In this document: piece by piece, positions 16,901-63,165 of the stretch
Layout of the letters: each line of letters opens with the position of its first letter
Position numbering within the stretch: position 1 is the stretch's first letter
Source of the DNA: Bispira polyomma
Taxonomy: Eukaryota
Direction: 5' to 3'
DNA length: 64,000 bases
Assembly (NCBI GenBank): GCA_965649765.1
Contig: OZ287752.1
Coordinates: 26,350,001 to 26,414,000, forward strand
Position numbers and translations under genes: made by a program
The notes under the pieces: model-generated
Databases searched by the model: none
The model's input: only the letters and a program-made list of their open reading frames with translations
What the model was told of the DNA's origin: nothing

Positions 16901-17360
16901 ATTGTAACATAGAAACATCAGCAGTAACTATTAACTTCAGGATGATCATGTTAGAGACCACCAAGGTTCTTTAAGTTACCACTGAGAATAAACAACTATG
17001 TTTTGAGTCATATTGTATGTGCTGGTATTTTTACCATGTGTCTTACCCACAAGGCCATACTTTCCAGATGAGGATATAACTATACTCACCTATGAGTGGA
17101 CATACCCCACTGATGATAGATCCAACCCAGGCAGTCAGAGCACGATTTTCTCCATAATAATCTAACAGCTCCAGAAATAAGACACCGAAGGAGTAGATGA
17201 CTCCGCCGCTTAGAGCCTGGCAGATAAAGGCAGCAGCCAGGATCAACCAGGCCCAGCCTTTGTCTGGGGTGACATACATATAGGTGGGGGCAGTCCTTAG
17301 TATTGATGGTGTGTCTGGTATTGCCTGTCCAGGGGATGGTTCTACCACTTTTGAAGTCAT
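13928..17360 (-). CDS. Monocarboxylate transporter (SLC16/MCT family, MFS), 6 coding exons, ~460 aa
   Basis: Exons 17360-17090, 16388-16245, 15933-15589, 15149-14880, 14662-14537, 14154-13928; all introns phase 1; total 1383 nt. Motifs PDKGWAW (MCT signature), F-KYRAVATGIVASGVGLG, GYFVPF, GRLVSG. All sites are GT-AG except the exon-2 donor (TTAAGT). Acceptor at 17367-17368 implies an upstream 5'UTR exon. Confidence 0.9.
16457..16595 (+). mobile_element. 5'-truncated SINE family 1 in the MCT intron
   Basis: 3' half of the family; TSD CTTGTCATCACG at 16445-16456 and 16596-16607. Confidence 0.92.
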
Positions 17361-19216: not shown

Positions 19217-19465
19217 GGGGCCGCGGTGGCCTAGTGGTTAGCAAGCATTGCGCTTCACAATCACTGGTCTCTCACCTCTGGGCGGCGTGAGTTCGAATCC
19301 CATCGATGCCTATGTGGGAAAGGTGGTAGTTCCTTACTGTGGGCCGCTGGTTTCTCTGCAGAACCTTGACCGACTGTATCCAGTGTTTCCTCCAGCGTTT
19401 CCAACTACCCGTCCCAATTTAACCTACTAAAAGGTACTAGAGTGGACGTTAAATATCCAAATTCA
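19217..19465 (+). mobile_element. tRNA-derived SINE family 1, full length and young
   Basis: TGGCCTAGTGG A box, GTTCGAATCCC B box; perfect 16-bp TSD AATGTTCCAGAGAGAC at 19201-19216 and 19466-19481. Confidence 0.95.
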
Positions 19466-19660
19466 AATGTTCCAGAGAGACACAGGACTGTATGTATAAA
19501 ATTGATTATGTATGTCAAATAATAAATGTTATATCATGCCTTATGAAAATTGTAATACATATTTAATGTCCTATATATTGTACATGAAATGGTACATATT
19601 GCAAAATAAATAACATATATTGAAAAAAAAATATTAGGTATGCCTTTTATATTATATGAA

Positions 19661-21900: not shown

Positions 21901-23033
21901 TGTCTTTATATTTGTAGATATCATAGCCAAAAGGTGTTTTTCATCCTCAGTTTGTTCGAATAATCTACCAGTTATAACAAATACCGTTATTCTATAAATT
22001 GTGCCATCATAAAAATTGTTTTACACATTTTTCTTTATTTTAACATTGACTTTTTTGCAAGTCTTATAATGGTGTGGTTTTAGGTTTGGACACCAGATCT
22101 TCACACCATTTCTGTTTGACTGATAATCACAGTTTCATGTTTGTTCAAACTATTATCTATCATATCACGGTTGAATAAGTTACTCCCCAATGTTGATTTC
22201 AGTTTTAAAGGGTTTAAACAAACACCTAAATTGAGATGGATGTTTCTGCCAACTGATAACTAATAAACAACTGATCAATGGCTGATCCTATTCAGTATGG
22301 CATTACTCCACGCCATGCATGAAGGAAAAGTTAGCAGTATACCTACTGAAGGCCAGTTGTTTACAGAGCAGAAAACCTTTGCCAACTACCCTGTGTTTGA
22401 TTCTGATTGTCCTACACACTATTGAACTGGCCATCAGAATATATGACACAACATATGTTGAAAGCAAAGTTAAACCCAAACTAGAACCATACAAATCAAA
22501 AAGGTTAAATGTAAGGTTTAACTTCGATAGCCTTGGCTAGTGTGAGCTAAGGCTGCGAGTCGCAGTTTGTGAAGTGCATCGATGCATCACTTGATGCATC
22601 AAACAACCCATTTCAACCAAATAAAGTGCTGAGACAAACCTAAACTCAACTATTTTTTTGTGTTTTCCCACAAAAAAATTTAGGTGTAAAATAAATAGAA
22701 AGTTACATTTTCGTATATCTATTATTTTTATTTTTCCTAGGGGACAATATGCTTTTTGGCGCATACTAAAATTCAGCCAATAGGGAGTAAAATATAAATG
22801 AACGAGTCGCAAAGCCAGGACTCGATGCATCGCTATACTTACCACAGTCTAGTTTTTAATGCATTGACTAAACAACTAATCATCACAGCCTTAGTGTGTG
22901 GATTAGGTAAAATGACACTGCATATTTGAATGCAGTGCTGAAAGCTCTGCTACAAAGAATGGCTACAAATCAAAGCTATATACATTACACATAGAACACC
23001 AAATTAATCATGCATCCTCTAAGGTGCTGATAG

Positions 23034-23265
23034 AGGCCGCACTAGTCTAGTGGTTAGCAGCACCTGCTTCACAATCAATGGCCTCTCACCAAAGCAGATT
23101 AAAATCCTGTTCCTTTCTTCATGTGGAAAAGTTTGTCAGGTACTTGCCTGTAGGCCCGTGGTTTACAGTGTGTTTCAGCACTGGTATTCTTGAACCGTTG
23201 TACCTGGCCATTGTGATATGACCTAAGCTATTAAAAGTGACAACCCAACTAAAACCCAACTAAAT
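23034..23265 (+). mobile_element. Degenerate tRNA-derived SINE, present in each array unit
   Basis: GGCCGCACTAGTCTAGTGGTTAGCAGC...CTTCACAATCAATGGCCTCTCACC head like family 1; GATATGACCTAAGCTATTAAAAGTG tail. Confidence 0.7.
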
Positions 23266-24389
23266 TTTAAGTTTCTGGTTCTAGTCCATTAACGGGAAAC
23301 GTCGCTGTGGGAAAGAAACTTGATAGGGGGTTACAGGTGAGCATAGGTAATCTAGAAAAGGTAGGTTTCAATTGACTTCTAAAATGACATATCTTCTCAT
23401 TAGGGAACTCAGTGTGCCATACTACATCATTCTGGGGTATACTTTTGTAAGCATTCAATTTAATAGGGTTTTCAACTCTAAATTCAAATATGCAGTCAGT
23501 TTTTACTTATCTTTACTTCAGTCAGATATAATGAAAGTTCCAATATTTGTTTGTTTGAGCTTGATTCTGAGTTGGAAATGTTGCCGCTGATGTCATTAAA
23601 TATTAAGAAAATCAGAATCTATACAAAACTCATATTGGGACGAATAATAAAGTACAACTATGTATGCAAAACTCCTTTAATGCACGTTAAATTTTATTTT
23701 TTTAAATTTTTTTTCCGTAAAGATAATATGACGAAAAGTTCCCCATTGTACTATATGACAGCACTTGCCACACCAATTTCTAATAAAATCTATAATTTTT
23801 TGAGGGAAGCCCAGAATTGAGTAGTGTGGATTACAACAGTGAAACTCCTCAAAAGTGATCAATACCTAAAATATTAAGACCTCAGACTTGATGAGCCTTG
23901 GTCTTTAAGCCTACACTTACATGTATAAGATATACATCTTCTGGCATCAACCGACATCAGCCAATTGTCTTTATCCCTATAGTTACAGTGTAAGCACCTC
24001 CATGTGTCAGATGAGATCAGATGTCGTCAGAGGCTTCACATATTTTTGGTCAGGGCAAATATGGTCGATTTTGGGGTGTTTTTGTGGAATATATAATTTG
24101 GCTGATGTCATGGTAATGTAGGCTTACACTTTTAGGTGTTGTCCACTTTCATTGCAGTTTACGTGTATACTACTTTAATATGTCAAGCATAGAGCACTAT
24201 ACATGTACGTTATATAACATCTGTATGATACCAGTTAATTATTTTAAATAGTTCTCGGATAGTTTCTTGGAACATTGTGAAAACATTTAAATCAGATGGC
24301 AGAATAATAATTCAAATACAGCAAGGACTAAATAAACATTCCATATTTTGTGACTATAACTTTTAATAGTAATGTATATATATGTATAT

Positions 24390-25316
24390 TTACGACAGTT
24401 TATGTCCCATATATGACTCATAGACAATCTTGAATCGCTTTGTCACAAAGTCATAAAATTCATACTCTAGTTTTATAATGTCGTTATCCATCAGCATTTG
24501 CCTGGCTGCTGCACTCATTTTGGGGGCTTTAAACCCTGACGTATGTCTGTACTTCTCGCTTTCTTTCAGGTACATGTGTGCATCTACTGCCCCTTTAAAG
24601 TAATGTGGCAACATGGTCTCTAGTACTTCTAGAAACTCTATGTACTTTGTCACATGACCCACCACAGCGAATCCCGTCAGCACGTTCTTGATGGCCAGGT
24701 TGAGGGCATGTCTTGTTGGCGTTTGACACAGGTAGTGTTGTCCACAGAAATGAGGGATGATGGTCCAGATAAACCTGACATCAGTACACTCAGGGTCAAA
24801 GGTGAGGACACACTCGCCAAAAGGCACATTGTGTCTTCTGTGGACATCTTCGTCGTCGGCATCTTTGAAAAAGTCTCCTACTATCTGCCCATGGTAGGTG
24901 ATCTTGTTTTTGTTGTTAATTGCCCTGCGGTAGTAGTAATACGACTCCAGTCTGTCTATTGGATCTCGAATGAGGTTGATGTACACTGGATCCAGCTTAA
25001 TGCCGTAGCTTGTGAAATTGATATAGTTCAGATGCTTACAGAAAACCCAGGGCTCTTTCATTTGAAGTAGTTTGCCTGCGGTGTATTTGATACTATGTCT
25101 GTCCAGGTGATAATTTGCAGTGATATACGGTTGGGTGAAGCCCTGGGTTGTATAGAAGTTATTGGTCCGTGACACGTTATATATAACATAGCGAGTGGAT
25201 TGGCTTCCACATTTAGGAACCATGTTGTAAAATATGTGTTTCACAGACGAGTTGTACTTGTGATCCACTTTGGAGATGTCCCACTCATTATCCTTGAATC
25301 TTAGATCTGAAGGAAT
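24390..25316 (-). CDS. 2-O-sulfotransferase-like catalytic exon, gene A copy 1 (no own anchor exon)
   Basis: Acceptor TTTTGTGTTCCCTTACAG; 308 aa; YNMVPKCGS (5'-PSB), YINLIRDPIDRLES (3'-PB), IPHFCG, EYEFYDF as in HS2ST/UST. Confidence 0.85.
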   Translation of the reverse strand: MPSDLRFKDNEWDISKVDHKYNSSVKHIFYNMVPKCGSQSTRYVIYNVSRTNNFYTTQGFTQPYITANYHLDRHSIKYTAGKLLQMKEPWVFCKHLNYINFTSYGIKLDPVYINLIRDPIDRLESYYYYRRAINNKNKITYHGQIVGDFFKDADDEDVHRRHNVPFGECVLTFDPECTDVRFIWTIIPHFCGQHYLCQTPTRHALNLAIKNVLTGFAVVGHVTKYIEFLEVLETMLPHYFKGAVDAHMYLKESEKYRHTSGFKAPKMSAAARQMLMDNDIIKLEYEFYDFVTKRFKIVYESYMGHKLS

Positions 25317-25342
25317 CTGTAAGGGAACACAAAACATGTATT

Positions 25343-25346
<4 letters not shown>

Positions 25347-25410
<64 letters not shown>
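25347..25410. repeat. (TA)32 microsatellite; (TA)25 at 28751, (TA)26 at 32141, interrupted at 35533
   Basis: Read directly; the length differences account for the unit-length differences. Confidence 0.97.
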
Positions 25411-25416
<6 letters not shown>

Positions 25417-25480
25417 GTTGATTTATATAAGGATACAGTTTTTATACTTTATTGGCAATGCCTAAAATGTACCTAGCAAA

Positions 25481-25800
25481 TTCCTATAGCTGACTCTGCT
25501 GGGAGTCAGCTCAGTCAAAACGAAAAATCCCGACACAACCAAAGCCGACTCCCCTTTATGACACACACCAATATATGTATGTCACACACCAATATATGTA
25601 TGTAACACACCAATATATGTATGTCACACACCTGCACAACAATCGAGCTTCCGCCCATTGTCTTCATCACAAAAGTACTAATGAAATTTAAATTTATAGA
25701 AAGCTCAATTTCTCAGCGACTGCTGGTCAGAGCCTATATCACTCTTGAAAGTTTAGAAAAGCCACTTTTACTACAAAACAGTATTACTTACTGCAATTGA
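25481..25800. mobile_element. Helentron-associated (HINE/DINE-like) non-autonomous element fragment, in each unit
   Basis: Terminal hairpin AGCTGACTC-tgctgg-GAGTCAGCT (25488-25511), then three ~21-22-bp repeats CACACACCAATATATGTATGT (25561-25632). Confidence 0.45.
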
Positions 25801-27793
25801 ATGGCTGGTGTTGTGAGAATATAGAAATTAGTTTTTCAACTGGTATCGTTAAAGGACATTTAAAAGTTATCACATTTTATTCATATTGATGAAGTTTGAG
25901 AAAAAATCAAAAGGTGTATTTGTAAATTTAAAGAAAGAACATATTATAATTTTATATTGAGGAGGTCAGATTGGCATTTATTTTAAGTGGGCAGTGGATA
26001 GTTCAGAGATCTTATTGGCTGAAACATGGCCATGTGACAGTTAGTGAAAGATGATATAACCCTGTATTACAGTTTATTCTCGCCTCAGGAAGCTACCTTG
26101 CTGATAACTGTAAGTGTATCCTTATTGTGGTGCATATCTTTGTTTTGTTAAAATTGCGTACTACATACAACACAGCCTAATCTTGTAGCAAATGTTACTT
26201 GATTATAATGTGCAGGAGTTGATAGTTTAACATGATCACAGATGGATCCAGGATTCTAAAAAATCATTTTTGGGATTGCATCAAACACAAGTTTGACAAC
26301 TAAAGAGTCTCTATACTGAGAATTCATATTTGAATGCAGTGCTGAAAGCTCTGCTACAAAGAATGGCTACAAATCAAAGCTATATACATTACACATAGAA
26401 CACCAAATTAATCATGCATCCTCTAAGGTGCTGATAGAGGCCGCACTAGTCTAGTGGTTAGCAGCACCTGCTTCACAATCAATGGCCTCTCACCAAAGCA
26501 GATTAAAATCCTGTTCCTTCCTTCATGTGGAAAAGTTTGTCAGGTACTTGCCTGTAGGCCCGTGGTTTACAGTGTGTTTCAGCACTGGTATTCTTGAACC
26601 GTTGTACCTGGCCATTGTGATATGACCTAAGCTATTAAAAGTGACAACCCAACTAAAACCCAACTAAATTTTAAGTTTCTGGTTCTAGTCCATTAACGGG
26701 AAACGTCGCTGTGGGAAAGAAACTTGATAGGGGGTTACAGGTGAGCATAGGTAATCTAGAAAAGGTAGGTTTCAATTGACTTCTAAAATGACATATCTTC
26801 TCATTAGGGAACTCAGTGTGCCATACTACACCATTCTGGGGTATACTTTTGTAAGCATTCAATTTAATAGGGTTTTCAACTCTAAATTCAAATATGCAGT
26901 CAGTTTTTACTTATCTTTACTTCAGTCAGATATAATGAAAGTTCCAATATTTGTTTGTTTGAGCTTGATTCTGAGTTGGAAATGTTGCCGCTGATGTCAT
27001 TAAATATTAAGAAAATCAGAATCTATACAAAACTCATATTGGGACGAATAATAAAGTACAACTATGTATGCAAAACTCCTTTAATGCACGTTAAATTTTA
27101 TTTTTTTAAATTTTTTTTCCGTAAAGATAATATGACGAAAAGTTCCCCATTGTACTATATGACAGCACTTGCCACACCAATTTCTAATAAAATCTATAAT
27201 TTTTTGAGGGAAGCCCAGAATTGAGTAGTGTGGATTACAACAGTGAAACTCCTCAAAAGTGATCAATACCTAAAATATTAAGACCTCAGACTTGATGAGC
27301 CTTGGTCTTTAAGCCTACACTTACATGTATAAGATATACATCTTCTGGCATCAACCGACATCAGCCAATTGTCTTTATCCCTATAGTTACAGTGTAAGCA
27401 CCTCCATGTGTCAGATGAGATCAGATGTCGTCAGAGGCTTCACATATTTTTGGTCAGGGCAAATATGGTCGATTTTGGGGTGTTTTTGTGGAATATATAA
27501 TTTGGCTGATGTCATGGTAATGTAGGCTTACACTTTTAGGTGTTGTCCACTTTCATTGCAGTTTACGTGTATACTACTTTAATATGTCAAGCATAGAGCA
27601 CTATACATGTACGTTATATAACATCTGTATGATACCAGTTAATTATTTTAAATAGTTCTCGGATAGTTTCTTGGAACATTGTGAAAACATTTAAATCAGA
27701 TGGCAGAATAATAATTCAAATACAGCAAGGACTAAATAAACATTCCATATTTTGTGACTATAACTTTTAATAGTAATGTATATATATGTATAT

Positions 27794-28720
27794 TTACGAC
27801 AGTTTATGTCCCATATATGACTCATAGACAATCTTGAATCGCTTTGTCACAAAGTCATAAAATTCATACTCTAGTTTTATAATGTCGTTATCCATCAGCA
27901 TTTGCCTGGCTGCTGCACTCATTTTGGGGGCTTTAAACCCTGACGTATGTCTGTACTTCTCGCTTTCTTTCAGGTACATGTGTGCATCTACTGCCCCTTT
28001 AAAGTAATGTGGCAACATGGTCTCTAGTACTTCTAGAAACTCTATGTACTTTGTCACATGACCCACCACAGCGAATCCCGTCAGCACGTTCTTGATGGCC
28101 AGGTTGAGGGCATGTCTTGTTGGCGTTTGACACAGGTAGTGTTGTCCACAGAAATGAGGGATGATGGTCCAGATAAACCTGACATCAGTACACTCAGGGT
28201 CAAAGGTGAGGACACACTCGCCAAAAGGCACATTGTGTCTTCTGTGGACATCTTCGTCGTCGGCATCTTTGAAAAAGTCTCCTACTATCTGCCCATGGTA
28301 GGTGATCTTGTTTTTGTTGTTAATTGCCCTGCGGTAGTAGTAATACGACTCCAGTCTGTCTATTGGATCTCGAATGAGGTTGATGTACACTGGATCCAGC
28401 TTAATGCCGTAGCTTGTGAAATTGATATAGTTCAGATGCTTACAGAAAACCCAGGGCTCTTTCATTTGAAGTAGTTTGCCTGCGGTGTATTTGATACTAT
28501 GTCTGTCCAGGTGATAATTTGCAGTGATATACGGTTGGGTGAAGCCCTGGGTTGTATAGAAGTTATTGGTCCGTGACACGTTATATATAACATAGCGAGT
28601 GGATTGGCTTCCACATTTAGGAACCATGTTGTAAAATATGTGTTTCACAGACGAGTTGTACTTGTGATCCACTTTGGAGATGTCCCACTCATTATCCTTG
28701 AATCTTAGATCTGAAGGAAT
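27794..28720 (-). CDS. 2-O-sulfotransferase-like catalytic exon, gene A copy 2
   Basis: Protein identical to copy 1. Confidence 0.85.
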   Translation of the reverse strand: MPSDLRFKDNEWDISKVDHKYNSSVKHIFYNMVPKCGSQSTRYVIYNVSRTNNFYTTQGFTQPYITANYHLDRHSIKYTAGKLLQMKEPWVFCKHLNYINFTSYGIKLDPVYINLIRDPIDRLESYYYYRRAINNKNKITYHGQIVGDFFKDADDEDVHRRHNVPFGECVLTFDPECTDVRFIWTIIPHFCGQHYLCQTPTRHALNLAIKNVLTGFAVVGHVTKYIEFLEVLETMLPHYFKGAVDAHMYLKESEKYRHTSGFKAPKMSAAARQMLMDNDIIKLEYEFYDFVTKRFKIVYESYMGHKLS

Positions 28721-28746
28721 CTGTAAGGGAACACAAAACATGTATT

Positions 28747-28806
<60 letters not shown>

Positions 28807-31183
28807 GTTGATTTATATAAGGATACAGTTTTTATACTTTATTGGCAATGCCTAAAATGTACCTAGCAAATTCCTATAGCTGACTCTGCTGGGAGTCAGC
28901 TCAGTCAAAACGAAAAATCCCGACACAACCAAAGCCGACTCCCCTTTATGACACACACCAATATATGTATGTCACACACCAATATATGTATGTAACACAC
29001 CAATATATGTATGTCACACACCTGCACAACAATCGAGCTTCCGCCCATTGTCTTCATCACAAAAGTACTAATGAAATTTAAATTTATAGAAAGCTCAATT
29101 TCTCAGCGACTGCTGGTCAGAGCCTATATCACTCTTGAAAGTTTAGAAAAGCCACTTTTACTACAAAACAGTATTACTTACTGCAATTGAATGGCTGGTG
29201 TTGTGAGAATATAGAAATTAGTTTTTCAACTGGTATCGTTAAAGGACATTTAAAAGTTATCACATTTTATTCATATTGATGAAGTTTGAGAAAAAATCAA
29301 AAGGTGTATTTGTAAATTTAAAGAAAGAACATATTATAATTTTATATTGAGGAGGTCAGATTGGCATTTATTTTAAGTGGGCAGTGGATAGTTCAGAGAT
29401 CTTATTGGCTGAAACATGGCCATGTGACAGTTAGTGAAAGATGATATAACCCTGTATTACAGTTTATTCTCGCCTCAGGAAGCTACCTTGCTGATAACTG
29501 TAAGTGTATCCTTATTGTGGTGCATATCTTTGTTTTGTTAAAATTGCGTACTACATACAACACAGCCTAATCTTGTAGCAAATGTTACTTGATTATAATG
29601 TGCAGGAGTTGATAGTTTAACATGATCACAGATGGATCCAGGATTCTAAAAAATCATTTTTGGGATTGCATCAAACACAAGTTTGACAACTAAAGAGTCT
29701 CTATACTGAGAATTCATATTTGAATGCAGTGCTGAAAGCTCTGCTACAAAGAATGGCTACAAATCAAAGCTATATACATTACACATAGAACACCAAATTA
29801 ATCATGCATCCTCTAAGGTGCTGATAGAGGCCGCACTAGTCTAGTGGTTAGCAGCACCTGCTTCACAATCAATGGCCTCTCACCAAAGCAGATTAAAATC
29901 CTGTTCCTTCCTTCATGTGGAAAAGTTTGTCAGGTACTTGCCTGTAGGCCCGTGGTTTACAGTGTGTTTCAGCACTGGTATTCTTGAACCGTTGTACCTG
30001 GCCATTGTGATATGACCTAAGCTATTAAAAGTGACAACCCAACTAAAACCCAACTAAATTTTAAGTTTCTGGTTCTAGTCCATTAACGGGAAACGTCGCT
30101 GTGGGAAAGAAACTTGATAGGGGGTTACAGGTGAGCATAGGTAATCTAGAAAAGGTAGGTTTCAATTGACTTCTAAAATGACATATCTTCTCATTAGGGA
30201 ACTCAGTGTGCCATACTACATCATTCTGGGGTATACTTTTGTAAGCATTCAATTTAATAGGGTTTTCAACTCTAAATTCAAATATGCAGTCAGTTTTTAC
30301 TTATCTTTACTTCAGTCAGATATAATGAAAGTTCCAATATTTGTTTGTTTGAGCTTGATTCTGAGTTGGAAATGTTGCCGCTGATGTCATTAAATATTAA
30401 GAAAATCAGAATCTATACAAAACTCATATTGGGACGAATAATAAAGTACAACTATGTATGCAAAACTCCTTTAATGCACGTTAAATTTTATTTTTTTAAA
30501 TTTTTTTTCCGTAAAGATAATATGACGAAAAGTTCCCCATTGTACTATATGACAGCACTTGCCACACCAATTTCTAATAAAATCTATAATTTTTTGAGGG
30601 AAGCCCAGAATTGAGTAGTGTGGATTACAACAGTGAAACTCCTCAAAAGTGATCAATACCTAAAATATTAAGACCTCAGACTTGATGAGCCTTGGTCTTT
30701 AAGCCTACACTTACATGTATAAGATATACATCTTCTGGCATCAACCGACATCAGCCAATTGTCTTTATCCCTATAGTTACAGTGTAAGCACCTCCATGTG
30801 TCAGATGAGATCAGATGTCGTCAGAGGCTTCACATATTTTTGGTCAGGGCAAATATGGTCGATTTTGGGGTGTTTTTGTGGAATATATAATTTGGCTGAT
30901 GTCATGGTAATGTAGGCTTACACTTTTAGGTGTTGTCCACTTTCATTGCAGTTTACGTGTATACTACTTTAATATGTCAAGCATAGAGCACTATACATGT
31001 ACGTTATATAACATCTGTATGATACCAGTTAATTATTTTAAATAGTTCTCGGATAGTTTCTTGGAACATTGTGAAAACATTTAAATCAGATGGCAGAATA
31101 ATAATTCAAATACAGCAAGGACTAAATAAACATTCCATATTTTGTGACTATAACTTTTAATAGTAATGTATATATATGTATAT

Positions 31184-32110
31184 TTACGACAGTTTATGTC
31201 CCATATATGACTCATAGACAATCTTGAATCGCTTTGTCACAAAGTCATAAAATTCATACTCTAGTTTTATAATGTCGTTATCCATCAGCATTTGCCTGGC
31301 TGCTGCACTCATTTTGGGGGCTTTAAACCCTGACGTATGTCTGTACTTCTCGCTTTCTTTCAGGTACATGTGTGCATCTACTGCCCCTTTAAAGTAATGT
31401 GGCAACATGGTCTCTAGTACTTCTAGAAACTCTATGTACTTTGTCACATGACCCACCACAGCGAATCCCGTCAGCACGTTCTTGATGGCCAGGTTGAGGG
31501 CATGTCTTGTTGGCGTTTGACACAGGTAGTGTTGTCCACAGAAATGAGGGATGATGGTCCAGATAAACCTGACATCAGTACACTCAGGGTCAAAGGTGAG
31601 GACACACTCGCCAAAAGGCACATTGTGTCTTCTGTGGACATCTTCGTCGTCGGCATCTTTGAAAAAGTCTCCTACTATCTGCCCATGGTAGGTGATCTTG
31701 TTTTTGTTGTTAATTGCCCTGCGGTAGTAGTAATACGACTCCAGTCTGTCTATTGGATCTCGAATGAGGTTGATGTACACTGGATCCAGCTTAATGCCGT
31801 AGCTTGTGAAATTGATATAGTTCAGATGCTTACAGAAAACCCAGGGCTCTTTCATTTGAAGTAGTTTGCCTGCGGTGTATTTGATACTATGTCTGTCCAG
31901 GTGATAATTTGCAGTGATATACGGTTGGGTGAAGCCCTGGGTTGTATAGAAGTTATTGGTCCGTGACACGTTATATATAACATAGCGAGTGGATTGGCTT
32001 CCATATTTAGGAACCATGTTGTAAAATATGTGTTTCACAGACGAGTTGTACTTGTGATCCACTTTGGAGATGTCCCACTCATTATCCTTGAATCTTAGAT
32101 CTGAAGGAAT
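31184..32110 (-). CDS. 2-O-sulfotransferase-like catalytic exon, gene A copy 3 (PKCGS to PKYGS)
   Basis: Identical to the other copies except C>T at 32004. Confidence 0.85.
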   Translation of the reverse strand: MPSDLRFKDNEWDISKVDHKYNSSVKHIFYNMVPKYGSQSTRYVIYNVSRTNNFYTTQGFTQPYITANYHLDRHSIKYTAGKLLQMKEPWVFCKHLNYINFTSYGIKLDPVYINLIRDPIDRLESYYYYRRAINNKNKITYHGQIVGDFFKDADDEDVHRRHNVPFGECVLTFDPECTDVRFIWTIIPHFCGQHYLCQTPTRHALNLAIKNVLTGFAVVGHVTKYIEFLEVLETMLPHYFKGAVDAHMYLKESEKYRHTSGFKAPKMSAAARQMLMDNDIIKLEYEFYDFVTKRFKIVYESYMGHKLS

Positions 32111-32136
32111 CTGTAAGGGAACACAAAACATGTATT

Positions 32137-32198
<62 letters not shown>

Positions 32199-34575
32199 GT
32201 TGATTTATATAAGGATACAGTTTTTATACTTTATTGGCAATGCCTAAAATGTACCTAGCAAATTCCTATAGCTGACTCTGCTGGGAGTCAGCTCAGTCAA
32301 AACGAAAAATCCCGACACAACCAAAGCCGACTCCCCTTTATGACACACACCAATATATGTATGTCACACACCAATATATGTATGTAACACACCAATATAT
32401 GTATGTCACACACCTGCACAACAATCGAGCTTCCGCCCATTGTCTTCATCACAAAAGTACTAATGAAATTTAAATTTATAGAAAGCTCAATTTCTCAGCG
32501 ACTGCTGGTCAGAGCCTATATCACTCTTGAAAGTTTAGAAAAGCCACTTTTACTACAAAACAGTATTACTTACTGCAATTGAATGGCTGGTGTTGTGAGA
32601 ATATAGAAATTAGTTTTTCAACTGGTATCGTTAAAGGACATTTAAAAGTTATCACATTTTATTCATATTGATGAAGTTTGAGAAAAAATCAAAAGGTGTA
32701 TTTGTAAATTTAAAGAAAGAACATATTATAATTTTATATTGAGGAGGTCAGATTGGCATTTATTTTAAGTGGGCAGTGGATAGTTCAGAGATCTTATTGG
32801 CTGAAACATGGCCATGTGACAGTTAGTGAAAGATGATATAACCCTGTATTACAGTTTATTCTCGCCTCAGGAAGCTACCTTGCTGATAACTGTAAGTGTA
32901 TCCTTATTGTGGTGCATATCTTTGTTTTGTTAAAATTGCGTACTACATACAACACAGCCTAATCTTGTAGCAAATGTTACTTGATTATAATGTGCAGGAG
33001 TTGATAGTTTAACATGATCACAGATGGATCCAGGATTCTAAAAAATCATTTTTGGGATTGCATCAAACACAAGTTTGACAACTAAAGAGTCTCTATACTG
33101 AGAATTCATATTTGAATGCAGTGCTGAAAGCTCTGCTACAAAGAATGGCTACAAATCAAAGCTATATACATTACACATAGAACACCAAATTAATCATGCA
33201 TCCTCTAAGGTGCTGATAGAGGCCGCACTAGTCTAGTGGTTAGCAGCACCTGCTTCACAATCAATGGCCTCTCACCAAAGCAGATTAAAATCCTGTTCCT
33301 TCCTTCATGTGGAAAAGTTTGTCAGGTACTTGCCTGTAGGCCCGTGGTTTACAGTGTGTTTCAGCACTGGTATTCTTGAACCGTTGTACCTGGCCATTGT
33401 GATATGACCTAAGCTATTAAAAGTGACAACCCAACTAAAACCCAACTAAATTTTAAGTTTCTGGTTCTAGTCCATTAACGGGAAACGTCGCTGTGGGAAA
33501 GAAACTTGATAGGGGGTTACAGGTGAGCATAGGTAATCTAGAAAAGGTAGGTTTCAATTGACTTCTAAAATGACATATCTTCTCATTAGGGAACTCAGTG
33601 TGCCATACTACACCATTCTGGGGTATACTTTTGTAAGCATTCAATTTAATAGGGTTTTCAACTCTAAATTCAAATATGCAGTCAGTTTTTACTTATCTTT
33701 ACTTCAGTCAGATATAATGAAAGTTCCAATATTTGTTTGTTTGAGCTTGATTCTGAGTTGGAAATGTTGCCGCTGATGTCATTAAATATTAAGAAAATCA
33801 GAATCTATACAAAACTCATATTGGGACGAATAATAAAGTACAACTATGTATGCAAAACTCCTTTAATGCACGTTAAATTTTATTTTTTTAAATTTTTTTT
33901 CCGTAAAGATAATATGACGAAAAGTTCCCCATTGTACTATATGACAGCACTTGCCACACCAATTTCTAATAAAATCTATAATTTTTTGAGGGAAGCCCAG
34001 AATTGAGTAGTGTGGATTACAACAGTGAAACTCCTCAAAAGTGATCAATACCTAAAATATTAAGACCTCAGACTTGATGAGCCTTGGTCTTTAAGCCTAC
34101 ACTTACATGTATAAGATATACATCTTCTGGCATCAACCGACATCAGCCAATTGTCTTTATCCCTATAGTTACAGTGTAAGCACCTCCATGTGTCAGATGA
34201 GATCAGATGTCGTCAGAGGCTTCACATATTTTTGGTCAGGGCAAATATGGTCGATTTTGGGGTGTTTTTGTGGAATATATAATTTGGCTGATGTCATGGT
34301 AATGTAGGCTTACACTTTTAGGTGTTGTCCACTTTCATTGCAGTTTACGTGTATACTACTTTAATATGTCAAGCATAGAGCACTATACATGTACGTTATA
34401 TAACATCTGTATGATACCAGTTAATTATTTTAAATAGTTCTCGGATAGTTTCTTGGAACATTGTGAAAACATTTAAATCAGATGGCAGAATAATAATTCA
34501 AATACAGCAAGGACTAAATAAACATTCCATATTTTGTGACTATAACTTTTAATAGTAATGTATATATATGTATAT

Positions 34576-35528
34576 TTACGACAGTTTATGTCCCATATAT
34601 GACTCATAGACAATCTTGAATCGCTTTGTCACAAAGTCATAAAATTCATACTCTAGTTTTATAATGTCGTTATCCATCAGCATTTGCCTGGCTGCTGCAC
34701 TCATTTTGGGGGCTTTAAACCCTGACGTATGTCTGTACTTCTCGCTTTCTTTCAGGTACATGTGTGCATCTACTGCCCCTTTAAAGTAATGTGGCAACAT
34801 GGTCTCTAGTACTTCTAGAAACTCTATGTACTTTGTCACATGACCCACCACAGCGAATCCCGTCAGCACGTTCTTGATGGCCAGGTTGAGGGCATGTCTT
34901 GTTGGCGTTTGACACAGGTAGTGTTGTCCACAGAAATGAGGGATGATGGTCCAGATAAACCTGACATCAGTACACTCAGGGTCAAAGGTGAGGACACACT
35001 CGCCAAAAGGCACATTGTGTCTTCTGTGGACATCTTCGTCGTCGGCATCTTTGAAAAAGTCTCCTACTATCTGCCCATGGTAGGTGATCTTGTTTTTGTT
35101 GTTAATTGCCCTGCGGTAGTAGTAATACGACTCCAGTCTGTCTATTGGATCTCGAATGAGGTTGATGTACACTGGATCCAGCTTAATGCCGTAGCTTGTG
35201 AAATTGATATAGTTCAGATGCTTACAGAAAACCCAGGGCTCTTTCATTTGAAGTAGTTTGCCTGCGGTGTATTTGATACTATGTCTGTCCAGGTGATAAT
35301 TTGCAGTGATATACGGTTGGGTGAAGCCCTGGGTTGTATAGAAGTTATTGGTCCGTGACACGTTATATATAACATAGCGAGTGGATTGGCTTCCACATTT
35401 AGGAACCATGTTGTAAAATATGTGTTTCACAGACGAGTTGTACTTGTGATCCACTTTGGAGATGTCCCACTCATTATCCTTGAATCTTAGATCTGAAGGA
35501 ATCTGTAAGGGAACACAAAACATGTATT

Positions 35529-35587
<59 letters not shown>

Positions 35588-36513
35588 ATATATATACACA
35601 GTTGATTTATATAAGGATACAGTTTTTATACTTTATTGGCAATGCCTAAAATGTACCTAGCAAATTCCTATAGCTGACTCTGCTGGGAGTCAGCTCAGTC
35701 AAAACGAAAAATCCCGACACAACCAAAGCCGACTCCCCTTTATGACACACACCAATATATGTATGTCACACACCAATATATGTATGTAACACACCAATAT
35801 ATGTATGTCACACACCTGCACAACAATCGAGCTTCCGCCCATTGTCTTCATCACAAAAGTACTAATGAAATTTAAATTTATAGAAAACTCAATTTCTCAG
35901 CGACTGCTGGTCAGAGCCTATATCACTCTTGAAAGTTTAGAAAAGCCACTTTTACTACAAAACAGTATTACTTACTGCAATTGAATGGCTGGTGTTGTGA
36001 GAATATAGAAATTAGTTTTTCAACTGGTATCGTTAAAGGACATTTAAAAGTTATCACATTTTATTCATATTGATGAAGTTTGAGAAAAAATCAAAAGGTG
36101 TATTTGTAAATTTAAAGAAAGAACATATTATAATTTTATATTGAGGAGGTCAGATTGGCATTTATTTTAAGTGGGCAGTGGATAGTTCAGAGATCTTATT
36201 GGCTGAAACATGGCCATGTGACAGTTAGTGAAAGATGATATAACCCTGTATTACAGTTTATTCTCGCCTCAGGAAGCTACCTTGCTGATAACTGTAAGTG
36301 TATCCTTATTGTGGTGCATATCTTTGTTTTGTTAAAATTGCGTACTACATACAACACAGCCTAATCTTGTAGCAAATGTTACTTGATTATAATGTGCAGG
36401 AGTTGATAGTTTAACATGATCACAGATGGATCCAGGATTCTAAAAAATCATTTTTGGGATTGCATCAAACACAAGTTTGACAACTAAAGAGTCTCTATAC
36501 TGAGAATCGACAC

Positions 36514-36544
<31 letters not shown>

Positions 36545-37406
36545 CTTTACAAAATCCTTGATCTGCTTATGATTATGGTGACACAGTATGACACTGTATA
36601 GTTGTATACCTTCAGAGTTCAGAGTGATTGCATATAACATATCTACTGACATTCCTAGTAACTAGGGCCCCTGTCTGTTGATCACAAGCTAGCCCACGTT
36701 TGGGTTTGGTTACAATCATCTCCTGGATTAGAAATCTTCGTATTTTGTGTTTATTTTTTGTGTGTTTATTTTTCCTATTAATGACAGCTGAGACAAATAG
36801 GCGCCAACTAGGGAGGTTTTTATTCATATTTATCTTTAATAAATTCATAATAATCCATAATGCTGCAAGAAAAAAGATCGGACTAAGAGTAGTCAACAAT
36901 AGTCATGTATTCTAACGAATTCACAAATTATAAGACAATTTAGGATTAGGTCACAACATGAAGAATACACGAGAATACTAAACGATGCTTTACAAATATT
37001 AGCTACTGATCCACCGAATGTCATGGTTACTGGTAATTACACCTGAATGTCCCAAATGAAAATGAAAGGCCTTGTGATGGAATGACGAATATCTACGACT
37101 ACTTACGAAAACACTAGAGTAATAAAATAAACCATGCTGAGCTGGTCCGGTCTCAAGCTTGCGAATACAACTGTCCATTATTTCTCAATCAAGTGATTGG
37201 CTACTTATATTCGTTTTCTGATGGTCATAGCATATTGGGCATGTATTGTTGTAAAATAATCAAAGATAACTACCACGTGTAGAGATAGAAATGCTTACCT
37301 CCCTGGATGTAACTGCAGCTTCATCTGTCTTCATATCAAACAAAACATAAAGAATTAAGGAGACGATCAACACAGATGATACACAAGTCCTAAAAGTTAA
37401 CTTCAT
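34576..37406 (-). CDS. Gene A: uronyl/heparan sulfate 2-O-sulfotransferase-like, 344 aa, two coding exons
   Basis: Exon 37406-37299 MKLTFRTCVSSVLIVSLILYVLFDMKTDEAAVTSRE (type II anchor, donor GTAAGC, phase 0) joined to catalytic exon 35502-34576. Confidence 0.9.
36421..36571. mobile_element. Small MITE with an internal C18(AC)n tract
   Basis: Left CACAGATGGATCCAGGATT, right AAAATCCTTGATCTGCTTATG; a related end CATAGGCGGATCCAGGGTTTTGTAAAA lies at ~43859. Confidence 0.55.
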
Positions 37407-37651
37407 GGCGTATATCTATGTATATATAAATATATGTATCATCTACATGGCATTTAAACAAAACAAGCATCTATATACAATGTATATAGTTGAACCAACA
37501 GCAAAGAAAGGGTTTAGACATGTATCAGAATTCAATAAAGGATCTTCGTTGCACACACACAGATGTTCAGCAAGGTATATTTCTTGTATTGTATTTTTTA
37601 CAAGCAGTAACATCATTAAACTCCAACAAAGGTAGACAGATTCGATTTTAG

Positions 37652-38165: not shown

Positions 38166-38655
38166 AAATGGGGACACAAGTAAAGGTTATTTCGCTGTTG
38201 GAAATTTACTTCAGTTGACAAATTGGAACATAAGTATAGGTTATTTCTTAGTAGGGGGGGCCGCGGTGGCCTAGTGGTTAGCAAGCATTGCGCTTCACAA
38301 TCATTGGTCTCTCACCTCTGGGTGGCGTGAGCTCGAATCCCGTCGATGCCTATGTGGGAAAGGTGGTAGTTCCTTACTGTGGGCCGCTGGTTTCAGTGCG
38401 GAACCTTGATCAACTGTATGCAGTATTTCCTCCAGTGTTTCCAACTACCCGTCCCAATATAACCTAAACAGGTACTAGAGTGCACGTTAAATATCCAAAA
38501 TTAAAAAAAAAAAAAATTATTTCTTAGTAGGAGATTTACTTCAGTTGACAAATGGGGACAGAATTATAGGTTATTTCTCTGAAAGAGATTTACTTCACTT
38601 GACAAATCGGGAAACAAGTATAGGTTATTTCTCTGTAGGAGATTTACTTCAGTTG
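38166..38655. repeat. ~54-bp minisatellite (4 units) interrupted by a SINE
   Basis: Unit CAAATGGGGACACAAGTATAGGTTATTTCTCTGTAGGAGATTTACTTCAGTTGA, repeated imperfectly. Confidence 0.85.
38256..38516 (+). mobile_element. tRNA-derived SINE family 1, full length with A-tail
   Basis: 15-bp TSD TTATTTCTTAGTAGG at 38241-38255 and 38517-38531. Confidence 0.95.
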
Positions 38656-39725: not shown

Positions 39726-39946
39726 GAATTTGAATTTGAATTGGGATATTTAACGTCCTATCTATTTCCTGTTTAGGTTATATTGGGACGGACAGTTGGA
39801 AATGCTGGAGCAAACAGTGCATACAGTTGATCAAAATTCTGCACTGAAACCAACGGGAGTCGAACCCACGCAAGCTGATCACAGAGGTGAGAGACCAGTG
39901 ATTGTGAAGCGCAATGCTTGCTAACCACTAGGCCACCATGGCCCCC
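39726..39946 (-). mobile_element. SINE family 1, reverse orientation, internally deleted
   Basis: Reverse complement of family 1; TSD ACAAATACTG at 39715-39724 and 39947-39956. Confidence 0.9.
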
Positions 39947-45237: not shown

Positions 45238-46734
45238 TTATAACAATTTGTGTCCAGTGGACGATTCATAAATAACCTTGAACCTCTTCCTAATGAAATC
45301 ATAGAATTCATACTCCAGCTTTATAGCATTAGTCTTCATTAGTACCTCCCTGACTTCTACACTGGTCTTTGAACCTTCGAATTCTCTCTTGTGGCGATAA
45401 CCTGGATTTTTATGGTCAAGATATGTGTGTGTTTCTACTGCACCTTTGAAGAACTGTGGCAACAACACTTCTGCTATTTCTTGAAATTGGACAAACTTCT
45501 CTACATGTCTCACTACAGCAAATTCTGTCAGCACATTCTTGATGGCCAGGTTGAGGGCATGTCTCGTAGGTGTTTGACACAGATAGTGTTGTCCACAGAA
45601 ATGGGGGATGATAGTCCAAATAAACCTGACATCACTACACTTAGGGTCAAAGTTAAGGACACACTCGTCAAATGTCATGTTGTGTCTTCTCTGAGCATCA
45701 GCTTTGTCGGAATCTTCAAAGAAGTCTTCCACAACCTTTTCCCAGTAGGTGATAATGTTCTCTGTTAAATTCATGGTCCTACGAAAGTATTAATGAGATT
45801 CTAATTTATCAATGGGATCTCTGACAATATTGATATAAACTGGGTCAAGGTTGTAGCCTTCTTCTGTGAAATTAATATAGTTTAAGTGTTTGGTAAACAG
45901 CCAGGGTTCATTGAGGCTCAGTAGACCACAAGCAGTGGTTCTGATGCTTTCTTTGCTGATATGATAATTAGCTATAATGTGCGTCTGTGTGAAGTATTTG
46001 CTTACGATGTAGTGATTGGCTTTCAACAGGCTATTGAGGAGGTGACGCATGGGCTTGCTTCCACATCTAGGCACCATGTTATAAAAGACCTGTTTTGTAG
46101 AAGAGACATTCCTCTTGTTAACCTTCAATAAATCCCATTGTGGAGCCATCAAAGTTTGAACAGATACCTTCAGGAAAGAAACAATACAAAAACAACATTT
46201 TTATGCTCATATGTATATTCTTTCATCTAAAAAATATGTGATACCATTTTATTTTGCTAATACCGAGACAATCTACTGCAGAGTTGCTGAAAATGCAAAC
46301 CTTAAGCTACCTACCTAACAATAGCAGAATCTAATAGCTTAACAGAGAACTATTAAAATAGCCATATAAAAAAATTTGTACACTGGAAGCAATTTATATT
46401 TAAAAGCAATATATTTACCTTGTTTTGTGTACACGGATCATCCTTATCAAAAACACGAAAAGCAACAGACAAAATTATCAAAGATAACCCAACAACAAAC
46501 ATTATCCAAGCCATATTCTAAATATGTCAAGAAGTATCACACCATTGCTTACACAAGAATGACAAACGATAATTATAATAACATTAGAATGTGTTAGGTT
46601 GCACTCTAAATACTTAAATATTTGTGCGGGGCAAATGTTATAAATATGTTTTTGTTATCCTTGGTAAAGAGAACATAAACAATAAACACAGTTGCCAATA
46701 AGATAAAGGGAACATATTTTCCAATTAATTTCAT
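45238..46734 (-). pseudogene. Gene C: 2-O-sulfotransferase-like pseudogene
   Basis: Catalytic exon 46167-45238 has TAT>TAA at 45790-45792 (ESH*YF vs ESHYYL). B-type anchor exon (ATG 46734) lacks its donor. Hybrid anchor exon 46514-46419 is intact. Confidence 0.88.
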
Positions 46735-47339
46735 GGTTACTTCTGATTCTGGAGTAGCTACTAGAAACACATACAAATATTATTATGATAAAAATTCTTC
46801 TTTTGTACTGATACAGAGATGTTCAGTAAGTATGTTTTACAGGGTGTTTGCAATAAAAACAATATCAAATGCCAATGTGGTTAGAGTCTGGGTTTCTTTA
46901 ATCAAGTTATTGATGTATTGACAAAATGCTTCTTCAGGCATATTTTGAAACCTGTCATTAGGTTAAGGACACATGTTTGCAAGCACCTCTTCTGATTGCA
47001 ATATATATCTAAGCAAAAAATTGCTGTTGTCACACTTTTATCCAATTTTTATCTGAAATACAACATATGCCCTGCATATTTATTTATTTATTCGTAGATG
47101 TAAGTACATTCATTTCAAACATTTCTATATACAAACAAAAACAAAAATACAATACAATATCTTTTATATGGAAATTATAAATTTACTAAATACGATATTT
47201 ATATATATGGATATTATAAATGTACTTGTTTACTTATTACACAGATGTTGATTGGTCCAATACGGTCTTTAGCAACTCATAACCACCGTCTCACTGGGGT
47301 TTTTTTACATTACCTATCATGTAAAACAGCATGATTATT

Positions 47340-61790: not shown

Positions 61791-63165
61791 TTATGACAAT
61801 TTGCGTTCAGTGGATGATTCATAAATAACCTTAAACCTCTTCCTGATAAAGTCATAGAATTCATACTCCAGCTTTATTGCATTATTCTTCATCAGTACCT
61901 CCTTGGCTTCTACACTTGTCTTTGGACCATCGAATTCTCTCTTGTGGCGATAAGCTGGAATTTTATGGTCAAGATATTTGTCCATTTCTACTGCACCTTT
62001 GAAGAACTGTGGCAACAACACTTCTGCTACTTCTAGAAACTGGACAAACTTTTCTACATGTCCCACTACAGCGAAATCCGTCAGCACATTCTTGATGGCC
62101 AGGTTGAGGGCATGTCTTGTTGGCGTTTGACACAGGTAGTGTTGTCCACAGAAATGTGGGATGATGGTCCAGATAAACCTGACATCAGTACACTCAGGGT
62201 CAAAGGTGAGGACACACTCGTCAAATGTCATGTTGTGTCTTCTCTGGGCATCTGCTTTGTCTGCATCTTTGAAGAAGTCTGCCACAACCTTTCCCCAATA
62301 GGTGATAATGTTCTCCGATAAATTTGCGGTCCTACGCAAGTAATAATGAGATTCTAATTTATCAATGGGATCTCTGACAATATTGATGTAAACTGGGTCA
62401 AGGTTGTAGCCTTCTTTTGTGAAATTAATATAGTTCAAGTGTTTGGTAAACAGCCAGGGTTCATTAAGGCTAAGTAGACCATGAGCAGTGGTTCTGATGC
62501 TTTCTTTGCTGATATGATAATTGGCTATAATGTACGTCTCGGTGAAATCTTTGCTTACGGTGTAGCGATTAACTTGCGACAGGCTATTGAGGAGGTAACG
62601 CATGGGCTTGCTTCCACATCTAGGCACCATGTTATAAAAGACCTGTTTTGCAGAAGAGACATTCCTCTTGTTAACCATCAATAAATCCCATTGTGGACCC
62701 ATCGTAAATTGAGCAGATTCCTTCAAAAAACAAACAATAAAAGAATAAAATTTTATGCTCATATGTACATTCTTTGATGTACAATACGCATCACCAAAAA
62801 TATAAAATTTCAAAAGGGACCAATTTATTTTTAGCTCTAATAAATGGCTACAAGGCTGCACATTCTGAACTATAATCAGTTGACGTCATTTAATTTTACT
62901 AATACCGATGCAGTTTTATTAAGTTGCTGGCAATGCAAACCTTGAGTTACATACTTAACAATAACAGAATCTAATAGCTTAATAGAGAACTGTGGAAACT
63001 GATATAGTAAGCCTTGTAGAATTTGTACACTAGAAGGAATTTATATACAAAAGCAAATATATTTACCTCTTTTTGTGTACTTGGATCATCCTTATCAAAG
63101 ACAAGAAAAGCAACAGACAAAATTATCAGAAGAAATAATAGGAACGATTTAAACCTGAACTTCAT
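61791..63165 (-). CDS. Gene E: 2-O-sulfotransferase-like, 342 aa
   Basis: Anchor exon 63165-63067 MKFRFKSFLLFLLIILSVAFLVFDKDDPSTQKE (donor GTAAAT) plus catalytic exon 62720-61791 (acceptor TTTTTTGAAG). Confidence 0.9.

What the first reader, a model, noticed from the sequence alone, without database searches (positions are those of the whole stretch)
22921..37406. One anchor exon, four tandem catalytic terminal exons (gene A)
Seen: the 3.4-kb unit holds ~1 kb of intron, the acceptor, the whole catalytic exon and the 3' flank, but not the anchor exon (37406-37299) or its promoter. Inference: this is not a simple dosage increase. Copies 1-3 can be expressed only as alternative last exons, or from an internal start at the in-frame ATG just upstream of the acceptor (MFCVPLQ), which would give an unanchored enzyme. 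It may be a pipe-like gene caught as it forms.
Basis: partly seen in the sequence, partly recalled or inferred. Interest (0 to 1): 0.8.

Follow-up and report, generated by a model that had tools for sequence, protein, structure and literature searches.

The report
Last exon of sulfotransferase gene quadruplicated
A 3.4-kb piece holding the whole enzyme-coding last exon of a two-exon Golgi-type sulfotransferase gene stands four times in a row behind a single membrane-anchor exon. It is a real and very young partial gene duplication, but nothing yet shows that the three extra copies are used.

Summary
Four head-to-tail units of about 3.4 kb (22921-36507) are 99.6-99.8% identical. On the minus strand each carries 1005 nt of intron 1, the acceptor, a 308-codon Sulfotransfer_2 exon, and 1469 nt of 3' flank with poly(A)-like hexamers. 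The 36-codon signal-anchor exon (37406-37299) and its upstream region lie outside the array and occur once.

The two-exon, phase-0 design is shared by paralogs B and D and by the A ortholog in a related species, where the catalytic exon is single.

Short-read contigs from two samples contain the unit-to-unit junction. Word depth in the unit is 2.3-5 times that of the flank. So this is not a one-copy assembly artefact.

The structural inference is sound: without promoter and anchor, this is not a simple dosage gain.

No RNA data could be reached, so neither alternative-last-exon use nor the internal ATG start is tested. The internal ATG is absent from B and from the ortholog, and its N-terminus is not hydrophobic.

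Most likely only the proximal copy is spliced and polyadenylated, and the other three are young redundant passengers. The copies encode the same protein, apart from one Cys-to-Tyr change in copy 3. The "nascent pipe" idea is an analogy, not a finding. The scan also noted this stretch under a wider cluster note.

The parts
37299..37406 (-). Exon 1 of gene A: start codon, type II signal anchor and short stem (36 codons), with donor GAG|gtaagc, phase 0. Single copy.
   Evidence: Searches give the sequence. It is homologous to the anchor exons of B, C and D. Kyte-Doolittle maximum is 2.67.
36508..37298 (-). Non-duplicated 5' part of intron 1 (791 nt). A C18(AC)n low-complexity tract lies directly beside the proximal breakpoint (36513-36545).
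33107..36507 (-). Unit 4, proximal to the anchor exon. It holds 1005 nt of intron, the catalytic exon 35502-34576 (308 codons plus TAA) and 1469 nt of 3' flank. Private bases are 35887 A and two interruptions of (TA)n.
   Evidence: Pfam PF03567 at E 3.7e-11
29715..33106 (-). Unit 3, with catalytic exon 32110-31184. Private SNP 32004 C>T on the plus strand changes TGT to TAT, Cys to Tyr, in the PKCGS (5'-phosphosulfate-binding) loop.
   Evidence: This Cys is present in all 8 UST-like sequences aligned.
26325..29714 (-). Unit 2, with catalytic exon 28720-27794. Its protein is identical to those of units 1 and 4.
22921..26324 (-). Unit 1, the most distal, with catalytic exon 25316-24390. It is followed by the unique 3' flank. 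Private SNP 23116 T.
33100..33113 (.). Unit-to-unit junction ...GAGAAT-T-CATATTT.... It is identical at 26324/26325, 29714/29715 and 33106/33107. There is one filler base and no homology between the two breakpoints.
   Evidence: Junction-spanning contigs appear in runs X1 and X3, which are two samples (table 5 'goes back 3402' and table 8 records 1 and 16).
35533..35596 (.). (TA)n microsatellite ending about 30 nt upstream of the acceptor. It recurs at 32141-32192, 28751-28800 and 25347-25410. Lengths differ between units (32/26/25/32 repeats).
33217..33469 (.). Copy of a dispersed short repeat with thousands of copies in the genome, in the 3' flank of every unit, 110 nt from the distal breakpoint but not at it.
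   Evidence: 6472 candidates, 78-82% identity; very high word depth, table 2
33879..34553 (-). Poly(A)-signal-like hexamers inside the unit: ATTAAA at +25 and +213 and AATAAA at +694 after the stop. Positions are given for unit 4 and are the same in all units.
   Evidence: These are sequence matches only and their use is not shown.

Best explanation
Gene A is an ordinary two-exon gene for a type II membrane (Golgi-type) carbohydrate sulfotransferase of the HS2ST/UST/Pipe group.

A very recent tandem segmental duplication copied its last exon. One breakpoint lies in intron 1 and the other 1.47 kb downstream of the stop codon. The first junction formed without homology and carries one filler base. 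Unequal crossing-over then raised the number to four in this assembly.

The promoter, start codon and membrane anchor were not copied. The gene therefore still works as before. The single anchor donor pairs with the first acceptor transcribed (unit 4), and the transcript ends at a poly(A) site inside that unit. Units 3 to 1 are promoter-less, nearly identical passengers. At most they are used now and then when the proximal acceptor or poly(A) site is missed, and they would then give the same protein.

What is shown: the structure, its youth, its presence in independent DNA data, and the enzyme family. What is inferred: which copy is spliced, and where transcripts end.
For: - Structure and identity of the units.
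- All three junctions are identical, with a 1-nt filler and no shared sequence at the breakpoints.
- The column-507 pattern T,C,T,C fits duplication of a two-unit block.
- The anchor exon is single and homologous to those of B, C and D.
- The same anchor-plus-catalytic, phase-0 design is seen in B, in D and in the A ortholog of a related species. There the catalytic exon is single within 20.9 kb and there are no long repeats.
- The junction contig is present in two samples. Unit word depth is 60/66/360 against 12/28/76 in the flank.
- Each unit carries poly(A)-like hexamers.
- The enzyme motifs align with solved HS2ST1: PKxxS loop, catalytic His, RDPIxRLxS.
- The only coding difference is a Cys-to-Tyr change at a family-invariant Cys in a distal copy, as expected if that copy is not under selection.
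- From general knowledge of co-transcriptional splicing, the first of several identical acceptors is favoured.
Against: - There is no RNA evidence at all, so preference for the proximal copy is inference.
- The poly(A) hexamers nearest the stop are the weaker ATTAAA variant. Read-through into unit 3 and some use of distal acceptors is therefore plausible.
- The duplication is present in the assembly and probably in two further samples, so it is not a rare private variant. That is compatible with neutrality but also with some benefit.
- The exact copy number rests on the assembly alone.
Confidence: 0.6

Rival explanations
1. Nascent alternative last exons, the reader's 'pipe in the making'. A substantial share of transcripts skip the proximal acceptor or poly(A) site and join the anchor exon to units 3, 2 or 1. 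All four exons would then be expressed and free to diverge into isoforms.
For: Each unit has an identical acceptor in phase 0 with the anchor donor, a full ORF with stop, and poly(A)-like hexamers. The first hexamers are non-canonical ATTAAA. The Drosophila pipe locus of the same enzyme group has one common first exon with the start codon and ten isoforms (PMC3291829). A pipe-named cluster ranks second in the Atlas feature search.
Against: No transcript data. The exons are identical apart from one probably damaging substitution, so there are no distinct isoforms yet. In this cluster the other genes each have their own anchor exon. Copy C, with a broken anchor donor, also carries a stop codon.
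Confidence: 0.2
2. Independent transcription of each unit from within the intron, for example near the (TA)n tract. Translation would start at the intronic ATG (MFCVPLQ...) and give an unanchored sulfotransferase.
For: The ATG is in frame, 21 nt upstream of the acceptor, in all four units. A long (TA)n tract lies just upstream.
Against: The ATG is absent at the homologous place in B and in the ortholog. The resulting N-terminus has no signal or anchor (Kyte-Doolittle maximum 0.46), so the product would stay in the cytosol, away from the Golgi lumen where enzymes of this family act. Nothing resembling the region upstream of the anchor exon is present in the unit.
Confidence: 0.05
3. Assembly artefact in copy number. 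The tandem duplication is real, but the count of four, or some of the private SNPs such as the Cys-to-Tyr change, is an assembler error.
For: The unit-3 and unit-4 private bases (35396-equivalent T, 35887 A) are not seen in any contig of the three runs. A synonymous variant absent from the assembly (34939 A>T) is seen at 25-30%. The depth ratios are inconsistent, 2.3 to 5.
Against: The junction contig is present in two samples, and unit depth is well above flank depth in all runs. The units differ in (TA)n length and in SNPs, which a collapsed or looped assembly would not create. There are no gaps in the window. Contigs drop rare variants, so absence of the private SNPs proves little.
Confidence: 0.12

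Closest known systems
Drosophila pipe locus (HS2ST-like sulfotransferase with ten isoforms)
   Same: Same enzyme group. There is one common first exon holding the start codon, followed by a series of alternative parts that each encode a sulfotransferase domain (PMC3291829). Here one anchor exon is followed by four complete catalytic last exons.
   Different: The pipe domains are diverged, and isoform-specific expression and function are documented (as cited in PMC3291829). Here the exons are 99.7% identical, use of more than one is unshown, and orthology to pipe was not tested.
Partial (exon-level) tandem gene duplications and young copy-number variants
   Same: Breakpoints lie inside a gene and in its 3' flank. 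The junction is non-homologous with a filler base. Later expansion by unequal crossing-over is implied by the identical junctions. Copies are near-identical, and there are signs of variation between individuals.
   Different: Nothing essential. The only notable point is that the duplicated segment is exactly a self-sufficient terminal exon with acceptor, full domain, stop and poly(A)-like signals.
Vertebrate uronyl 2-sulfotransferase (UST) and heparan sulfate 2-O-sulfotransferase (HS2ST1, PDB 3f5f and 4ndz)
   Same: Sulfotransfer_2 domain. About 30% identity to fish UST. E 2e-29 to HS2ST1, with aligned PAPS-binding loops and catalytic His. Type II anchor.
   Different: This is a lineage-specific expanded family, with at least 58 matches in this genome. 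The substrate is unknown. Like UST, it has only one of the two neighbouring His residues of HS2ST1.
Drosophila lola and mod(mdg4): loci with arrays of alternative 3' exons (from my own knowledge, not checked here)
   Same: Common 5' exons joined to one of many tandemly arranged 3' terminal exons that arose by duplication.
   Different: Those arrays are old and diverged and are shown to be expressed. The protein families are unrelated.

Membership tests
Sulfotransfer_2 (PF03567), HS2ST/UST/Pipe group | Significant match to the family profile over the whole domain | tested here: met
   PF03567 at E 3.7e-11, 44.1 bits against a cut-off of 22, residues 32-297 to profile 8-251 of 252. Fish UST hits at E 1e-28. 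HS2ST1 3f5f at E 2.3e-29.
Sulfotransfer_2 (PF03567), HS2ST/UST/Pipe group | PAPS-binding loops (5'-PSB PKxxS/T and 3'-PB RDPxxRxxS) and the catalytic His | tested here: met
   The alignment to HS2ST1 pairs YNMVPKCGSQS with YNRVPKTASTS, KHLNYINF with GHVSYLDF, and IRDPIDRLESYYY with IRDPIERLVSYYY. The functional roles of these residues come from my knowledge of the HS2ST structure papers and were not tested here.
Sulfotransfer_2 (PF03567), HS2ST/UST/Pipe group | Type II membrane topology (N-terminal signal anchor) | tested here: met
   Exon 1 has K2 and R6 followed by 16 uncharged residues, with a Kyte-Doolittle maximum of 2.67. This is a prediction only.
pipe-type locus (one common 5' exon, many alternative sulfotransferase-domain 3' exons) | Single common first exon with start codon, followed by several complete domain-coding exons on the same strand | tested here: met
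   One anchor exon at 37406-37299 and four catalytic exons, each with an acceptor in phase 0
pipe-type locus (one common 5' exon, many alternative sulfotransferase-domain 3' exons) | The alternative exons encode different protein domains (distinct isoforms) | tested here: not met
   Three of the four exons encode identical proteins and the fourth differs by one residue
pipe-type locus (one common 5' exon, many alternative sulfotransferase-domain 3' exons) | More than one of the exons is spliced to the common exon in mRNA | not testable with these tools
   No RNA run holds the stretch. The runs laid were DNA-like contigs.
pipe-type locus (one common 5' exon, many alternative sulfotransferase-domain 3' exons) | Orthology to insect pipe | not tested
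   There is only a feature-based lead: a pipe-named arthropod cluster at rank 2, score 0.95. No pipe sequence was available for a tree.
Young tandem segmental duplication / copy-number variant | Head-to-tail copies with identical junctions, supported by DNA data other than the assembly | tested here: met
   Three identical junctions. Junction-spanning contigs in X1 (855 nt) and X3 (511 nt), and raised unit depth in all three runs.
Young tandem segmental duplication / copy-number variant | Copy number differs between individuals | tested here: inconclusive
   Unit-to-flank depth ratios are about 5, 2.3 and 4.6, but contig word depth is no copy number. A variant (34939 A>T, 25-30%) that is absent from the assembly shows the arrays are not identical between individuals.

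The most novel reading that the evidence does not exclude
The array is a living first stage of a pipe-type locus. The single anchor donor is spliced to all four terminal exons at appreciable rates. The copies are kept in the population and have begun to diverge (Cys-to-Tyr in copy 3, a synonymous variant in other individuals). This would show how a one-promoter, many-domain sulfotransferase gene starts.
Probability: 0.12. Interest if true: 0.6.

Novelty: new member of a known kind. Interest (0 to 1): 0.3.

Why it matters
Loci in which one 5' exon is joined to one of many duplicated 3' exons, such as pipe, are known only in their old, diverged state. The first step is rarely seen. That step is a tandem copy of a terminal exon with its acceptor and poly(A) signals but without promoter and start codon.

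This locus is a clean, datable example of that first step, in the same enzyme group as pipe. It would allow a direct measurement of how identical competing last exons are used.

Without transcript data it remains an ordinary young partial duplication. In this gene cluster, copies that lose a working anchor appear to decay.

Tried and rejected
1. RNA evidence. The single run search (kind any) found three holders, none on record as RNA. The exact-product look-up for the 315-aa ORF found nothing. The word-based protein search returned no protein from this species. Expression could therefore not be tested.

2. Copy number from depth. Only Logan contigs were available. The ratios are inconsistent between two runs of one sample (5 against 2.3). 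I use them only to reject 'one copy'.

3. An older example of 'one anchor, several catalytic exons' in this genome. The closely spaced pair on C14 has different exon structures and looks like two separate genes. I did not examine the C10 and C4 clusters.

4. An anchor for gene E. None lies within 6 kb upstream. I left this open.

5. Homology-mediated origin. The dispersed repeat in the unit is 110 nt from the breakpoint, not at it, and the two breakpoints share no sequence. Non-allelic homologous recombination is rejected for the first duplication.

6. Zhang et al. 2009 on pipe isoforms is not held in the library. The pipe description rests on PMC3291829.

Each exon was handled by reference.

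8. Several small joints (33275-33436, 33332->36748, 33452->37411) have sides of only 18-24 letters in or beside the high-copy repeat. I treated them as repeat noise.
Full report
**What is there**

The window is part of a chromosome-scale animal assembly (G000, 1.04 Gb in 75 pieces; the window is C5:26350001-26414000). It has no gaps.

Repeat finding and self-BLAST show four head-to-tail units: 22921-26324, 26325-29714, 29715-33106 and 33107-36507. They are 99.6-99.8% identical.

A four-way alignment lists every difference:
- Column 196: T only in unit 1 (23116).
- Column 507: T in units 1 and 3, C in units 2 and 4.
- 32004: T only in unit 3.
- 35887: A only in unit 4.
- Two interruptions of the TA tract in unit 4.
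- (TA)n lengths of 32, 25, 26 and 32 repeats.

The three internal junctions are identical (...GAGAAT-T-CATATTT...). Comparison with the two outer flanks shows one filler base and no shared sequence at the breakpoints. The proximal breakpoint abuts a C18(AC)n tract (36513-36545).

**The gene**

Each unit carries a 315-codon ORF on the minus strand. It matches Pfam Sulfotransfer_2 (E 3.7e-11), fish uronyl 2-sulfotransferases at about 30% identity, and solved HS2ST1 structures 3f5f and 4ndz (E 2e-29). The PKxxS loop, the His of the active site and the RDPIxRLxS loop all align.

The first seven codons of the ORF (MFCVPLQ) are the end of an intron: tgttttgtgttcccttacag|ATT.

Upstream, at 37406-37299, lies a 36-codon exon, MKLTFRTCVSSVLIVSLILYVLFDMKTDEAAVTSRE|gtaagc. 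It has a strong hydrophobic core, with a Kyte-Doolittle maximum of 2.67. Donor and acceptor are both phase 0.

The model is supported by homology:
- Paralogs B and D have homologous anchor exons of 35 codons, at 42543-42439 and 53505-53401.
- B's catalytic exon starts with the same IP..L motif as A's.
- The A ortholog in a related species has the same design. This is P0001, 66% identical and a reciprocal best match. Its anchor exon starts at L001:8813 and its acceptor lies near L001:9982.

Each exon was handled by reference.

On the minus strand a unit thus holds 1005 nt of intron 1, the 927-nt catalytic exon and 1469 nt of 3' flank. The flank contains ATTAAA at +25 and +213 and AATAAA at +694 after the stop. 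The anchor exon, 791 nt of intron and everything upstream are outside the array. No anchor-like sequence exists inside the units.

**Is it real DNA?**

The run search found three holders from one study, covering two samples. All are kept as contigs and none is on record as RNA. Laid on 33000-37500:
- One contig in X1 (855 nt) and one in X3 (511 nt) run from the right end of a unit across the junction into the left end of the next ('goes back 3402').
- Contig word depth inside the unit is about 60, 66 and 360. The single-copy flank with the anchor exon has 12, 28 and 76.
- The tool warns that such depth is no copy number, and the two runs of one sample disagree (ratio 5 against 2.3). I use the depth only to reject a single copy.
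- The majority base at 35887 in the runs is G, as in units 1-3.
- A synonymous variant absent from the assembly (34939 A>T, Pro195) is present at 25-30% in both samples.
- The private bases of units 3 and 4 are not seen.

This suggests that the runs come from other individuals and that arrays differ between individuals. However, contigs drop rare variants. The exact number four rests on the assembly.

**Age and origin**

Units differ at 2 to 5 single-base sites per 3.4 kb, about 0.06-0.15%. The array is therefore very young or is kept uniform by exchange between units.

The T,C,T,C pattern at column 507 fits duplication of a two-unit block. The related species has one catalytic exon in 20.9 kb around the A ortholog and no long direct repeats. 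B-to-A order on one strand is shared.

The dispersed short repeat in the 3' flank (33217-33469, thousands of copies) is not at a breakpoint. The first duplication was non-homologous, and the later ones can be explained by unequal crossing-over.

**How it most likely works**

Which copies are expressed cannot be shown here.

My best reading (about 0.6) is that the anchor donor pairs with the first acceptor transcribed, in unit 4. The transcript ends at a poly(A) site inside that unit, and units 3-1 are passengers. This rests on three points:
- General knowledge of co-transcriptional splicing.
- The presence of 3'-end signals in each unit.
- The fact that the only coding change sits in a distal copy.

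That change is Cys to Tyr in the PKCGS loop, at a Cys present in all eight UST-like sequences aligned.

Some use of distal exons is plausible because the nearest hexamers are the weaker ATTAAA form. It would yield the same protein.

The internal-ATG route is unlikely. The ATG is not present in B or in the ortholog. The N-terminus it would give is not hydrophobic (0.46), so the product would not enter the secretory pathway where this enzyme family acts.

**Context in the cluster**

Anchor exons of A, B, C and D are homologous, so the family normally grew by whole-gene duplication.

Copy C has a 23-nt deletion that removes its anchor donor. It also has an in-frame TAA in its catalytic exon. This shows what happens here to a copy without a working anchor.

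The family is large in this genome, with at least 58 matches. That was not checked here.

**Comparison with the known**

Drosophila pipe encodes ten isoforms that share the first exon with the start codon (PMC3291829). The architecture here is the same in outline and the enzyme group is the same. A pipe-named cluster is the second feature-based neighbour in the Atlas (a lead only).

The defining features of a pipe-type locus are diverged domains and shown use of several of them. The first is not met and the second is untestable here. Orthology was not tested.

The safest classification is a young partial tandem gene duplication, a well-known kind of structural variant, which happens to have the exact content needed to become alternative last exons.

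**Verdict**

The structural inference is supported. The functional and evolutionary reading is untested and less likely than silent redundancy. Interest is modest (0.3). It would rise to about 0.6 if transcripts show that distal exons are used.

Noticed in passing
window 45244-46140 and 46606-46776 (minus strand): Paralog C is a decaying whole-gene copy of D. Its anchor exon is 97% identical to D's but has a 23-nt deletion that removes the splice donor. Its catalytic exon carries one in-frame TAA.
   Followed up: partly
window 61791-62861 and L003 (G000:C5:26414001-26420000): Paralog E has an intact catalytic exon. No anchor-exon homolog was found between it and 6 kb upstream, so its first exon is either farther away or missing.
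   Followed up: partly
window 19217-19467, 38256-38506 and 39882-39946: A 250-nt repeat (92-97% identical) occurs on both sides of gene A. An inverted 65-nt copy lies 1.6 kb from the second one, which looks like the ends of a transposon-like element between genes A and B.
   Followed up: no
window 56067-57765 (minus strand): Two long ORFs between genes E and D are not sulfotransferases. Their alignment looks like a non-LTR retrotransposon fragment. The relative's locus L001 also holds endonuclease and reverse-transcriptase ORFs.
   Followed up: no
window 34939: A synonymous A>T (Pro195) at 25-30% share in contigs of both samples. It is absent from all four assembled units, so there is a unit type that the assembly does not contain.
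   Followed up: partly
G000, several chromosomes (C10 15.11-15.28 Mb; C4 22.6, 25.65 and 84.4-84.6 Mb): There are at least 58 matches to this sulfotransferase domain in the genome, many in tight clusters. Most have the domain split differently: the match starts near residue 60-80.
   Followed up: no
window 17106-17279 (minus strand): A first exon with a hydrophobic N-terminus (MYVTPDKGWAWLILAAAF...). It resembles the start of a major-facilitator or monocarboxylate-type transporter and belongs to an unrelated neighbouring gene.
   Followed up: no
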